Below are positions 40,884 through 45,672 of a DNA stretch of 64,000 nt, piece after piece (position 1 is the stretch's first letter; each line of letters begins with the position of its first letter). The notes under the pieces were generated by a model. The model made no database searches. It saw only the letters and a list, made by a program, of their open reading frames with translations, and was not told the origin of the DNA. Location of the stretch: NCBI RefSeq assembly GCF_052425735.1, contig NC_135771.1, positions 3,596,001-3,660,000 of the forward strand. The letters run 5' to 3'. Source of the DNA: Oculina patagonica. Taxonomy: Eukaryota. A program made the translations under genes and the position numbers.

Positions 40884-43800
40884 TATAATGAGAATTATAC
40901 TAGGGCCGCCAAGCGGCCTGAAGTAATAATTCGGATTATATAAACAGACGAAGTGAGAAATATATGAGAAAACAAATGGTAGGAATTTCCCAGTTAGTGC
41001 TTCAAACCACTTTTTAACGCTAAAAATATAAGGGGTACCCCCTTAAAAGTAAAACAAGGGCCTGGGTCTACCCATAAGGCCCTGGTGCCTAGGTCACGCG
41101 GATCCATGATCCTTCGCTGGCTTTTTGACGCCGTGAAATAGACAGGCAAAGCAACACCCTATAAATACACCAGGGAAGGGTGAAGGGTGGGAACCTCATA
41201 TATTTCTCACTTCGTCTGTTTATATAATCCGAATTATTACTTCAGGCCGCTTGGCGGCCCTAGTATAATTCTCATTATATTTCACAGACTCCGTTCGAAA
41301 TATATGAGAAAACAAATGGTAGTTTTTAACGCCACTTGTATAAGCAATTAAAAAATCATAACACAGCCAGTTTCCAAGTAAACTTAAATGAGAGGAAAAA
41401 CCTCGATGTCAGTGTAGAACGGCTGTTTCATCTACCTTGAGGAAAAAACCTCCATAGCAAGGTTTAAATTAAACATGGGATAACAGTAAAATGTGCTGAA
41501 TGCAGTTTAAGCACAAGACCAATAGGTCATCTAATGCAAAAAGTAAGTGTGAGAAATTTACTGGCGGCTGCTATTGTAGAAGCAACACACACTAGCATAG
41601 CTTTAAAATATGACTGTCTATTCCTGCTGCACACATAAAAAATTTTCTAGCCAGCCCACAATGCGTTATAACGGTTTGTGGGGCAGTCTAATTGAAATTA
41701 ACAACTAAACGGTTGACAGAATGTATGTTCCTAAAAAGATAAAATAACTAAATATCGTTGAAGACATTATTTGGGAGAAAGCTTTTTGCCTTGGTCAAAG
41801 ACGGGCAAAAAAATGCTTCTGTAGGTTTGTCTGAATCGAGCCTAAAATATCAGATTTTCTAAGCATAATATAACATATAGCGAGTAAGAAGACACCGCAA
41901 AAAACTCCGTTAGGAGAGTTGAGGTCAGAGATAAATGTAAACTCAGGGAGAACAACTTCCTGGCTGGGTGAACTTAAAGTGTTAGGGGCTATAGTAGCTT
42001 TTTATAACAATGAATAACGTGTGTACTACCGCCCGAAAACATACACCCATTTGCCGCGGTTTTGCTCAAGGCGATTTCGCCTAGGAACTCCGACAGACGC
42101 GGCGCGGGCGGATTTTTCTGGATTTACCGACGTCTGCCGCGGCAAGTGAGGCCGCAGTGTAGTAAGTTATAACGGCAGTTTAGATAGGCTACAGATACAC
42201 TTGTGTTATGTTCAAGAACGTAACATTTGCCGGTGTGATACCGTAATCCCTTGCTTGGCAAAAAATAGACGGGTTCCAATAAACTTGGTATACGTGACAT
42301 ACACCAAAATAAATAATTATTATTATGTAAAACGACTTATTTGGATAATTGTGGACCCAGACTTCCCTCTTGCTTTCATAGCAGATCAGTCGTTTTCTCG
42401 AAGGAGAAGTTTGTTTAGTTAAAACTTCTGTTTTTTTTTAATAATTAAAAAGCCCAAGCTTTAAAATAAAAACTGAATGAAAATATGCTTGAAGTGGTAT
42501 AAAATAATAGCAACTAATTGAATTACTCAAGTCGCTTAAAAACAAGGACTTCACGCATTCCATTTAATTTGGCACTGCAAAACTGTCCACATTTCGCTAT
42601 GAAGGAAAGTTTTTTACGCCAAAAATGCATTTATAATAATCAATTTACATTACACCATGTAATGTAAACTTATGTAAACTTTGAGGTTATGGAAAACCCT
42701 TTAAGCGATTTTCTTATTTCATGATCTGCAATCATCTGCTTCTAAACGTGAAATAAATGCGACAGGATACTGTCTTAAGTCTCTGAGTTTAATGTCGATC
42801 TGACAAACAAACAAATAAACATATGGGTATTCGCCAGGTTCACTTGTAGGCTTTTATTAGGAACGGAACGTAAAAGGCGGGAAATATACAGGCATTTGCC
42901 AAATGGCTAGTAAAATCAGAACGATAAGATTTGATAGCCATGGGCTTCGCGATGTGATATTCCGCGAAGCAGACAGTGAGAACAGTGTAGAATCTTGCTG
43001 CTTTTTCCTGACGGAATGGTAAAATCACTAACATTGAAAACAATTATGAAACCCAGTAAGTGGGTAAGCACCGATGTTGAAATATGAATGATTTTCCAAG
43101 GTTACTTGTTAACCTTAAAGGACTGGTGGAGAGCCACTTCAGAGTGTTTTGACGACTTCCTTAGTTGCCGAAGTCAAAGGTTTATAAGGACTTGAATAGA
43201 CTTTCACTTGAAGAAAGTTGAAAGAGGCTTAATCAATTCTGTAGGGCCAAACACAGGCCGAATGGGCGGGTCTTGAACCGGAACATATTCCCGTACGAAA
43301 AAATAGTCAATTTTGAGAAAAACTCGTAACGAGAACTGAAATGAACGAGTCCTTAAAAATGTACTTGACATAAAAACTCCTAGTAAAAGCGACGCTTTTA
43401 AGCAACTGATGTTTTCCGTCTGGAAAGGTTCGGTACAATGAACTTCATTTGATCGGGTCTATCACTAGACACATGGGTCCTAGGTTTTTGGTACCAGGAA
43501 AACGAGCTTCCGTGAAAAAAATCGTGTCGTGAAAAGGGAAATCTTTCATAAAGATCCTTTTCGTGGTAACCTATGAAGTGCTGGAATAATACAAGAGCCT
43601 CCTGACCCGATACGCGGGTAAAGGTGGAGACATATAGGGATGGTATATTAAAAACCGAAGGCTCATTTCTGAGAACCCGCAATGATGTGGAGAATACACG
43701 GTACGGTTTTGGGGCGATTTTTAAGTCACAAGGCGCTAGGAGTAATTGTACTGTGCGAGTCTAATTGACTTCACCTTTTGACCGTCGTCAACGCTAATTC

Positions 43801-45672
43801 TGGTAGCTCTGCAAGGGTTACGACCTGGTTCAGGCTGCAAGAAACACTCTGTTTGCAGAGAACAGAAAGAGCCATAGTTGTAATTTTGAACAAATTTACT
43901 GTGGTAAAATTAAGTTTCTATTTATCTGTCTGATGTCTCAAAATAGACAGAAAAGCATTTGCTCTGCCAGCAGGTAAAGCTTGCAGCATGGTTAATTATC
44001 ACATAAGTTGGACCTCAATCATACACCAGGGGCACCATACATGGGGCCAGTGGCATTCTAGAAGTCAAGGCAAACAATGAACATTGGACCTTGTCCCTTT
44101 CTTGGACAGAATATCTCATTCAAAGGGAAACTTGATTTGACAATTGCTGATCAAGTTTTGGGAGCAGATAGTGCATCCACTTGAGGAGTTCCCAATCTTC
44201 CAGAATAAGAAGATATTGCTTATATATAATAATATATATTTGCAAAAGTTAGTATCCACAAATTTGGGGAAAGAGGATAATGGTTTCCAGGAGGTTGACT
44301 TGGAAGTGAGTCGAACAGACCATTATCATCACTGTAATACTGTACTTAAGTTTGCAGCTTCGTCAGATATGTCTTATCAGACTCTGTTTGTTTCTAAATG
44401 GTCTCTACGAGTGCTATCATTATAAGACTGCATTGAGTTCCCAGCTTCTTTAGATGTCTATCAGACTCGGTTTGTTCCTTAATAAGCTCGACGAGTGCCT
44501 AAAATAGGCTCTACAGGTGCCTGAATAGGCAATATTGGTGCCTCAATGGGCTCTATTGGTGCCTCAATAGGTAATATTGGTGCCTGAATAGGCGATATTG
44601 GTTCCTGAATTCATAGGCAATATTGGTGCCTGAATAGGCAATATTGGTGCCTGAATAGGTAATATTGGTGCCTGAATAGGCGATATTGGTGCCTGAATAG
44701 GCAATATTGCTGCCTGAATAGGCAATATTGGTGCCTGAATAGGCAATATTGGTGCCTCAATAGGCAATATTGGTGCCTGAATAGGCGATATTGGTTCCTG
44801 AATAGGCAATATTGGTGCCTGAATAGGCAATATTGGTTCCTGAATAGGCAATATTGGTGCCTCAATGGGCTCTATTGGTGCCTCAATAGGCAATATTGGT
44901 GCCTAAATAGGCGATATTGGTTCCTGAATAAGCAATATTGGTGCCTCAATAGGCAATGTTGGTGCCTGAATAGGCTCTATGGGTGCCTAAATAGGCTCCA
45001 CAGGTGCCCGAACGGGCGCAGCAGAAGTCCAAATGACTTATCGGTCGCCAAAGGTTCGCTGAACTTCTATCCTGACGAGTCATTAGCCATAATCGACAGA
45101 TCATCAGACTGAACTTGTTCGCAGCGAATCTATTCGCTCGTAAAGACTCTCGAGCGAGAGAAGAATCTCCTGAAGAGTATCATCGTCTTCTACGTAAAAG
45201 GTCTTTGCGTCGTTTGGCAGGACCATTCATCACGTATTTCAGGCAGACGCCGAAACAGTTTCGGCGGGAAGATGGCGACCAGCAACGAGTCCTTCTATGC
45301 GACTTTGTGTTGCCAAATGGATATCTTCAGCGATGCAATATATCTGAAGAGCGACAAAATATCGCTAAAAAGAAACCTGCTGTGCCAAAAACACAGAGGA
45401 ATAGCCTGAAAAGGTAAAAAATTAGCAAAAATACAAGATAAAGGGCAAATACTTACCGTAGGGTTTGAAGCACAAGGAAAAAAAGCCAGCGAAGGATCAT
45501 GGATCCGCGGGACCTAGGCACCAGGGCCTTATGGGTAGACCCAGGCCCTTGTTTTACTTTTAAGGGGGTACCCCTTATATTTTTAGCGTTAAAAAGTGGT
45601 TTGAAGCACTAACTGGGAAATTCCTACCATTTGTTTTCTCATATATTTCGAACGGAGTCTGTGAAATATAAT
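40884..45672 (-). mobile_element. DIRS1-like tyrosine-recombinase retrotransposon, non-autonomous (coding region decayed)
   Basis: ~170-bp ITRs at 40957-41126 and 45480-45649. The internal complementary region (41195-41322) joins the complements of both element ends through attata. TATAAT lies at both boundaries. Weak minus-strand remnants resemble YR (AGID...AST, ~41570-41630) and RT (YSDD, ~44325). Confidence 0.85.
44497..45011. repeat. 21-bp minisatellite inside the DIRS-like element
   Basis: About 24 units of ggtgcctgaataggcaatatt. Confidence 0.9.

What the first reader, a model, noticed from the sequence alone, without database searches (positions are those of the whole stretch)
40884..45672. 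DIRS1-type element with pristine replication signals but a decayed coding region
Seen: ~170-bp ITRs with one mismatch that I could find. The ICR at 41195-41322 exactly matches the complement of the 3' terminal extension joined to the 5' terminus, i.e. a pre-written circle junction. The hexamer TATAAT is present at both boundaries and at the ICR junction. The 4-kb interior has no long ORF, only faint YR and RT remnants. Known: DIRS1 elements use the ICR to rebuild their ends, circularise, and integrate via a tyrosine recombinase. Inference: a full-length non-autonomous DIRS parasite mobilised in trans recently, with TATAAT as the crossover or target site.
Basis: partly seen in the sequence, partly recalled or inferred. 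Interest (0 to 1): 0.7.

Follow-up and report, generated by a model that had tools for sequence, protein, structure and literature searches.

The report
Non-coding DIRS1-type retrotransposon with coding partner
This is one young copy of a roughly 30-copy, protein-less jumping gene of the tyrosine-recombinase (DIRS1) kind in a coral genome. It keeps only the end signals it shares with a rare protein-coding partner, and its 343-bp mini-derivatives show where the element is opened and pasted in.

Summary
The element has 183-nt inverted terminal repeats (ITRs). Its 128-nt internal complementary region (ICR) is the exact complement of the right end joined to the left end. There is no long ORF.

Two details are wrong:
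- The shared or crossover motif is the trinucleotide AAT (target WAAT), not TATAAT.
- The interior has no detectable tyrosine-recombinase (YR), RT, RNase H or methyltransferase (MT) remnant, so it is not shown to be a decayed coding region.

The element belongs to a family of about 30 long copies (mean pairwise divergence 1.4%; 9 of 14 copies have identical ITRs), plus deletion derivatives.

Four elements carry the same termini but RNase H homology instead. Two of them (about 4.9 kb, on C8 and C3) also have methyltransferase and YR homology in long open frames, on the predicted sense strand next to the ICR. These are the likely partner. I could not fetch them, so their intactness and RT are unverified.

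Terminus and ICR co-vary between copies, as expected if the ICR rebuilds the ends.

Several 343-bp mini-elements are exact circular permutations of the ITR-spacer-ICR segment, opened at the ICR junction.

Verdict: a new member of a known kind. The scan had noted other DIRS/PAT-like elements in this genome, but not this family.

The parts
40887..40889 (.). Left AAT, the trinucleotide shared with the right end and the ICR junction. The TAT at 40884-40886 is flanking DNA, not element.
   Evidence: The left boundary in 28 insertions is NNW-AAT|GAGAATT, with the preceding 3 nt variable.
40887..40943 (-). Terminal extension. It is the 3' extension (rE) in the sense orientation, which is the window minus strand. 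It is complementary only to the ICR and is itself a hairpin with apex GGCCGC-CAA-GCGGCC.
   Evidence: It is not part of the inverted repeat. RNA fold of the terminal 85 nt: -20.3 kcal/mol, z = -4.6.
40944..41126 (.). Left ITR arm (the 3' ITR in sense orientation). 40950-40956 is the 'divergent ITR' block.
   Evidence: 183 nt, 177 of 183 complementary to 45480-45662; five mismatches lie in the block.
41127..41194 (.). 68-nt spacer between the ITR and the ICR. It appears in inverted orientation in the 343-bp mini-elements.
41195..41322 (.). ICR. 41195-41273 is the complement of the left terminus, 41274-41276 (ATT) is the 3-bp circular junction, and 41277-41322 is the complement of the right terminus.
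   Evidence: Both halves are 100% complementary to their termini. The junction sequence folds at -52.5 kcal/mol, z = -9.7.
41323..45479 (-). Non-coding interior specific to this family, with no detectable protein homology.
   Evidence: The 40 nt at 45440-45479 is present in about 30 family copies but not in the coding-type elements.
43802..43803 (.). Point where this copy and two others (C6:8782947, C9:16905177) lack about 170 bp that most copies carry.
44516..44996 (.). 21-bp tandem repeat, 22.7 units. Unit number varies between copies.
45480..45662 (.). Right ITR arm (the 5' ITR in sense orientation).
45663..45672 (.). 10-nt right terminal extension ending in the right AAT (45670-45672).
   Evidence: The right boundary is invariant (...GAAATAT-AAT) and is followed by unrelated flanks in about 28 insertions.

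Best explanation
Window 40887-45672 is one copy of a non-autonomous DIRS1-like retrotransposon. Its sense strand is the window's minus strand.

It keeps only the cis signals: two ITRs, a hairpin-forming 3' extension, and an ICR next to the 3' ITR. The 4.2-kb interior is non-coding.

Inferred mechanism, from the established DIRS-1 model:
1. An RNA that starts and stops inside the ITRs is reverse-transcribed by enzymes supplied in trans.
2. The missing outer ends are copied from the ICR.
3. The completed junction, carrying one AAT, recombines with an AAT in the target through the partner's tyrosine recombinase.
4. This leaves AAT on both sides and no other duplication.

The enzymes most likely come from rare coding-type elements with the same ends (G000:C8:16785191-16790122 and C3:27885266-27890148).

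Shown here: the anatomy, the copy number, the boundaries, the terminus-ICR and ITR-ITR co-variation, and the existence of the partner. Inferred: the RNA route, supply in trans, and the crossover chemistry.
For: Anatomy.

Family:
- About 30 long copies at unique flanks.
- Mean pairwise divergence 1.4% over 2.9 kb.
- ITRs identical in 9 of 14 copies, and termini equal to the ICR in most.

Boundaries:
- AAT at both ends and once at the junction; target WAAT.
- A paralogous unoccupied site carries a single AAT.

Co-variation:
- Element positions 59/338 in two copies and 63/334 in one.
- Position 27/370 in the two coding-type copies.
- Private ITR variants are present in both arms of one copy.

Partner:
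- The same termini and ICR with 0-1 mismatch.
- The same mid-ITR 38-mer at both ends.
- YR homology on the minus strand next to the ICR, in open frames of 1007 and 551 aa.
- RNase H-MT homology at E = 1e-87 and 5e-81.

An older relative, L048, has ends 64-88% identical and carries MT and YR remnants.

Literature:
- The ICR is essential and the DIRS-1 RT acts in trans (PMC7192593).
- ATT/ATT/AAT termini, extensions and a divergent ITR block are typical of DIRS1-like elements (PMC3266345).
Against:
Its RT and gag are unshown, and each RNase H-MT match contains one stop (TAG or TAA).
- The RVT_1 scan was saturated by LINE elements.
- Two ICR variants on the right-terminus side (2-nt deletion at element positions 400-401; G-to-A at 414) recur in copies whose right terminus is unchanged. 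Either they are recurrent post-insertion changes (slippage, CpG decay), or that side is not templated from the ICR.
- No poly(A) signal or TATA box was seen on the presumed sense strand.
Confidence: 0.85

Rival explanations
1. It is a decayed autonomous DIRS copy, and the interior is a mutated gag/pol/YR region.
For: Its size (4.8 kb) is that of an autonomous DIRS1-like element. The coding-type relatives are 4.9 kb.
Against: - No homology in 40 stop-free pieces or to genome-specific YR and RNase H-MT profiles, while the old relative L048 still scores 1e-24.
- About 30 copies that are 98-99% alike share this interior, so it was non-coding when it amplified.
- The 40 nt inside the right ITR is absent from the coding-type elements.
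Confidence: 0.05
2. The family spreads as DNA only. The recombinase excises and reinserts circles in a Crypton-like way, or copies arose by segmental duplication, without reverse transcription.
For: - The ICR junction is a ready-made recombination site.
- The mini-elements could be looped out of DNA between the 39-nt direct repeats 40944-40982 and 41284-41322.
Against: - Flanks are unique, so the copies are not segmental duplications.
- Copy number is about 30, against 2-5 coding-type elements.
- Terminus-ICR and ITR-ITR co-variation is what regeneration of the ends at each replicative cycle predicts.
- The partner carries RNase H-MT next to its YR.
Confidence: 0.07
3. The family is extinct: a past burst with no active source or partner today.
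For: - The RNase H-MT matches of both 4.9-kb coding-type copies contain a stop.
- Only two full-size coding-type copies were found.
Against: - Nine of 14 copies have identical ITRs.
- One mini-element is 343 of 343 identical to the form predicted from most copies.
- One YR-containing open frame is 1007 aa without a stop.
Confidence: 0.3

Closest known systems
DIRS1-like retrotransposons (DIRS-1 of Dictyostelium; NveDIRS of Nematostella; Piednoel et al. 2011, PMC3266345)
   Same: - ITRs.
- A two-part ICR next to the 3' ITR, overlapping on a 3-bp junction.
- In sense orientation the element begins and ends with ATT and the junction reads AAT.
- Terminal extensions matched only by the ICR.
- A small 'divergent ITR' block, and a motif shared by both ITRs and both ICR halves.
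- ICR halves of 49 and 85 nt, close to NveDIRS6b (40-82).
   Different: It has no gag, RT/RNase H/MT or YR. It carries a 4.2-kb non-coding interior with a 21-bp tandem array.
TOC1 of Chlamydomonas, described as an active non-autonomous DIRS retrotransposon (bioRxiv 10.1101/2022.06.16.496473)
   Same: It is a protein-less retrotransposon of the DIRS order that depends on a coding relative.
   Different: From my own knowledge, not tested here: TOC1 has the split-direct-repeat (PAT-like) end structure, not ITR plus ICR. It is also in a different kingdom.
LARD and TRIM elements of LTR retrotransposons; MITEs of DNA transposons
   Same: They keep only the terminal cis signals of an autonomous partner, have an unrelated or minimal interior, and outnumber the partner.
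   Different: The enzymology differs (DDE integrase or transposase). They have no ICR and they create target-site duplications.
L048 (G000:C1:33508931-33514368), an older relative in the same genome
   Same: It has homologous termini, ITRs and ICR (64-88% identity) in the same layout, with the ICR downstream of the YR.
   Different: It still carries MT and YR remnants. Its ITRs are only 90% alike, no second full-length copy was found, and its ICR halves are 11 nt apart.

Membership tests
DIRS1-like retrotransposon (order DIRS) | Inverted terminal repeats | tested here: met
   183-nt arms, 177 of 183 complementary.
DIRS1-like retrotransposon (order DIRS) | ICR made of two adjacent halves complementary to the two termini, overlapping on a 3-bp circular junction | tested here: met
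   The 85-nt and 49-nt halves are 100% complementary. Across the family the overlap reduces to AAT/ATT.
DIRS1-like retrotransposon (order DIRS) | The same trinucleotide at both ends, complementary to the junction, and no other target duplication | tested here: met
   AAT at both ends in about 28 insertions with unrelated flanks. A paralogous empty site has one AAT. No orthologous empty site was available.
DIRS1-like retrotransposon (order DIRS) | Terminal extension(s) matched only by the ICR, and divergent plus conserved ITR parts | tested here: met
   57-60-nt and 10-nt extensions; a 7-nt divergent block that the ICR halves copy terminus by terminus.
DIRS1-like retrotransposon (order DIRS) | Encodes gag, RT/RNase H/methyltransferase and a tyrosine recombinase | tested here: not met
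   No hit in the window element. It is therefore filed as a non-autonomous derivative, not as an autonomous member.
Non-autonomous retrotransposon with an autonomous partner | Many copies at distinct loci share the same non-coding interior, including the same deletions | tested here: met
   About 30 copies. Three copies share the roughly 170-bp deletion, and at least six share a 1.26-kb deletion.
Non-autonomous retrotransposon with an autonomous partner | A coding element with the same cis ends exists in the same genome | tested here: met
   The C8:16785191-16790122 and C3:27885266-27890148 elements have termini and ICR with 0-1 mismatch and a matching mid-ITR. They show YR and RNase H-MT homology on the expected strand. 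This is coordinate-level evidence only. RT, gag and intactness were not shown.
Non-autonomous retrotransposon with an autonomous partner | Mobilisation in trans is demonstrated | not testable with these tools
   This needs RNA or cDNA data or an assay.
PAT-like / Ngaro (split direct repeats) | Terminal repeats are direct and split, not inverted | tested here: not met
   The long repeats are inverted.
Crypton (DNA transposon with YR only) | No reverse-transcription module and no ITR/ICR | tested here: not met
   ITR and ICR are present. The partner has RNase H-MT next to its YR.

The most novel reading that the evidence does not exclude
The 343-bp (and 332-, 336- and about 150-bp) mini-elements are integration products of small molecules made from the ITR-spacer-ICR corner of the element. 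They were opened exactly at the ICR's AAT junction.

If so, they are natural genomic fossils showing that a joined-ends (circular) form is the recombinase's substrate and that the crossover lies in the 3-bp junction. The circle junction could not be amplified by inverse PCR in Dictyostelium (PMC7192593).

They would also define a minimal cis-acting substrate of about 150 nt.
Probability: 0.5. Interest if true: 0.6.

Novelty: new member of a known kind. Interest (0 to 1): 0.45.

Why it matters
DIRS elements are the least understood order of retrotransposons. Their priming, end repair and integration rest largely on a 1985 model and one experimental system.

This coral family offers a clean natural data set:
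- a parasite and partner pair that share only the ITR, ICR and extensions, which delimits the cis signals;
- terminus-ICR co-variation that supports end repair from the ICR;
- about 30 mapped junctions that fix the crossover at AAT (target WAAT);
- recurrent circularly permuted mini-elements that point to a joined-ends substrate.

For genome annotation, it shows that DIRS-derived repeats without any coding homology can still be recognised by the ITR/ICR signature.

Tried and rejected
- Coding remnants in the interior: 40 stop-free pieces against Pfam, tblastn with DIRS-like ORFs of this genome and with L048 pieces, and profile HMMs for YR and RNase H-MT. Nothing was found.
- Rfam: no family matched.
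- The 5.7-kb extra DNA in copy C3:20408940-20419204: it has no long ORF, so it is not a partner.
- L047: only a solo end fragment beside P450 genes and a LINE-type RT.
- A degenerate terminus motif search found no further families.
- The RVT_1 scan of the genome was saturated by 5470 LINE-type candidates, so it says nothing about the partner's RT.
- A BLAST search with the ITR-spacer was saturated by family copies.
- The roughly 170-bp indel at 43802/43803 is not an intron. It has no GT-AG on either strand and only 2-nt microhomology.
- A simple internal-deletion model for the 343-bp minis scores much worse than the permutation model.
I did not try to read the partner through other tools.
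Full report
COORDINATES. 'Element position' (q) means window coordinate minus 40883. The window is G000:C14:3596001-3660000 of a 529-Mb eukaryote assembly. Earlier notes of this scan call it a stony coral; I did not verify that.

1. THE OBSERVATION

The repeat finder returns three inverted-repeat pairs:
- 40944-41126 with 45480-45662: 183 nt, 97% complementary.
- 40884-40968 with 41195-41279: 85 nt, 100% complementary.
- 41274-41322 with 45624-45672: 49 nt, 100% complementary.

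A direct comparison shows six ITR mismatches. Five lie in one 7-nt block (q67-73). One (q213) is private to this copy. Each ICR half copies the block of its own terminus, so the ICR is terminus-specific.

The region has no ORF above 109 aa from a start codon. Its longest stop-free stretch, 149 aa, lies in a 21-bp tandem array of 22.7 units at 44516-44996.

2. A MULTICOPY, YOUNG FAMILY

- BLAST of the element against its own genome gives 224 matches.
- Exact-pattern searches find the left-terminus motif 86 times (terminus plus ICR, 43 on each strand) and the right-terminus motif 90 times. Reversed-pattern controls give none.
- Pairing the hits gives about 36 long elements of 3.2-5.5 kb.
- A 40-mer from just inside the right ITR occurs at 34 places. 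This counts about 30 copies with this interior, plus a tandem array.
- Nineteen long copies differ pairwise by 0.5-2.3% (mean 1.4%) over q1-2920.
- The window copy clusters with C6:8782947 and C9:16905177 (0.7-0.9%). All three lack about 170 bp at 43802/43803 that the majority carry. At least six other copies share a deletion of q963-2228. So variants defined by deletions were themselves propagated.
- In 9 of 14 copies the 170-nt conserved ITR parts are identical, and the termini equal their ICR halves in most.

3. THE TRUE BOUNDARIES

- Across about 28 insertions the right end is invariably ...GAAATAT-AAT, followed by unrelated DNA.
- The left end is NNW-AAT|GAGAATT, with the three bases before AAT variable. 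TATAAT occurs in 3 of 28.
- The ICR junction reads GAAATAT-AAT-GAGAATT.
- So only AAT is present at both ends and once at the junction. The base before the target AAT is always A or T.
- One insertion (C7:24522145-24527018) lies in an older repeat. A paralogue of that repeat in L023 runs through the site with a single AAT and no gap.
- In sense orientation this is the ATT...ATT / AAT arrangement reported for most DIRS1-like elements. So are the extensions, the small divergent ITR block and the motif common to both ITRs and both ICR halves (PMC3266345).

4. THE INTERIOR IS NOT RECOGNISABLY CODING

- Forty stop-free pieces (all those of 41 aa or more on the minus strand, and the longest on the plus strand) give no Pfam family above noise.
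- ORFs of DIRS-like elements from this genome do not match the element in tblastn. These ORFs carry RNase H plus a Dam-like methyltransferase, followed by an overlapping tyrosine-recombinase ORF. The best E-value was 0.09.
- Profile HMMs built from those ORFs score 1e-24, 5e-19 and 2e-16 (YR) and 4e-23 (RNase H-MT) on L048, but nothing on the window element.
- Rfam finds nothing.

5. CODING RELATIVES

(a) L048 (C1:33508931-33514368, 5.4 kb)
- Its ends are 64-88% identical to ours and have the same layout.
- It carries MT and YR remnants on the strand that puts the ICR downstream of the YR. This fixes the sense strand of the window element as minus.
- It is old: its ITRs are 90% alike, and no second full-length copy was found.

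(b) The candidate partner
- A YR piece of L048 used as a protein query finds its two best relatives (55% identity) at C8:16785992-16786384 and C3:27886069-27886461. Both are on the minus strand, in open frames of 1007 and 551 aa.
- Both lie inside elements that the pattern searches had already delimited: C8:16785194...16790122 and C3:27885269...27890148 (4.93 and 4.88 kb). Their left terminus, ICR and right terminus match ours with 0-1 mismatch.
- The mid-ITR 38-mer matches at both ends in inverted orientation.
- An RNase H-MT query hits the same two elements upstream of the YR (E = 1.5e-87 and 4.9e-81). Each match contains one stop.
- The RNase H part also hits two 3.4-kb elements with the same ends (C1:16834342-16837750, C3:2816916-2820312). 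These look like deletion derivatives of the coding type.
- The 40-mer just inside our right ITR is absent from all four. As far as tested, what the two types share is the ends.
RT, gag and intactness therefore remain unshown. The RVT_1 scan was swamped by LINEs.

6. SIGNS THAT THE ENDS ARE REBUILT AT EACH CYCLE

- A change in the left terminus is mirrored by the complementary change in the ICR at q59/q338 (two copies that are also each other's closest relatives), at q63/q334 (one copy) and at q27/q370 (both 4.9-kb coding-type copies).
- Other changes are present on one side only, as expected after insertion.
- Private ITR variants occur in both arms of the same copy: the window copy at q167 and q220, and the C8 element in the 38-mer.
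- Two variants in the right-terminus half of the ICR (2-nt deletion at q400-401; G-to-A at q414, a CpG site) recur without a change in the right terminus. They fall in different sub-lineages or at mutable sites, so I read them as recurrent. They remain a caveat.

7. MINI-ELEMENTS

- At least five loci hold elements of 332-343 bp with both termini and AAT on each side. All have unique flanks.
- The form predicted by closing q100-439 on its 39-nt direct repeat (40944-40982 = 41284-41322, 87% identical) and opening it at the ICR's AAT is 343 nt.
- L051 matches that prediction 340 of 343 ungapped against the window copy, and 343 of 343 against the version in most copies. A plain internal-deletion model scores much lower.
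- L050 and L052 carry variants of another subfamily, so the minis arose more than once.
- A 332-bp mini fits the 11-nt shorter spacer of the coding type.
- Versions of about 150 bp exist (L056). Related lineages have their own minis (L049; C11:6900103-6900408).
- The minis have no ICR of their own.
- Two routes would give exactly this sequence:
  - a small circle looped out between the direct repeats (as DNA or cDNA) and integrated at the ICR junction; or
  - an inward transcript from the other ITR, in which the ICR's left half mimics the genuine 3' end, processed by the normal end-repair pathway.
- I cannot tell these routes apart. Both need the recombinase in trans and a cut at AAT.

8. STRUCTURE OF THE JUNCTION

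The 57-60-nt extension is itself a hairpin. The joined ends fold into a long imperfect hairpin (-52.5 kcal/mol, z = -9.7) with the AAT in the stem. This one has a different apex, and I did not compare them further.

9. WHAT IS KNOWN

- The DIRS-1 model uses the ICR to restore the ends. The ICR has been shown to be essential and the RT to act in trans. The circle junction could not be amplified by inverse PCR (PMC7192593).
- The 3-bp junction rule is established (PMC3266345).
- A non-autonomous element of the order, TOC1, is known.
- In the library searched I found no description of circularly permuted mini-derivatives.

10. VERDICT

This is a textbook-ended, protein-less DIRS1-like family with a candidate partner: a new member of a known kind. 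The title's 'decayed coding region' and the TATAAT site are not supported. The mini-elements are the part most worth following up.

Noticed in passing
L053 = G000:C2:6339800-6343200: A tandem array with a 508-bp period and at least four units. Each unit joins the last roughly 220 nt of the interior, a shortened right ITR and right terminus, and about 210 nt of unrelated DNA. It looks like a satellite seeded by the element's right end.
   Followed up: partly
L003/L033 = G000:C9:16904863-16909396: A family copy that lacks element positions 319-622, that is the whole ICR. By the DIRS-1 result (PMC7192593) it should be unable to transpose further.
   Followed up: partly
L046 = G000:C14:14876500-14884500: A rearranged locus with one left terminus, two right termini 1.5 kb apart and inverted interior pieces. 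It may be nested or recombined copies.
   Followed up: no
L047 = G000:C6:22738500-22748400: Two tandem cytochrome P450 genes with a LINE-type RT ORF between them, next to a solo ITR fragment of the L048 lineage.
   Followed up: partly
whole genome: There are 379 candidate tyrosine-recombinase loci and 343 candidate RNase H-MT loci, many in long open frames. Tyrosine-recombinase elements are diverse and apparently active in this genome.
   Followed up: no
L048:2736-2928 (element positions 2205-2397 of L048): A roughly 200-bp insert inside L048 recurs at 84-90% identity at eight or more other loci. It is probably a SINE or MITE.
   Followed up: no
window, whole: The window contains 155 N. I neither examined nor filled them.
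   Followed up: no
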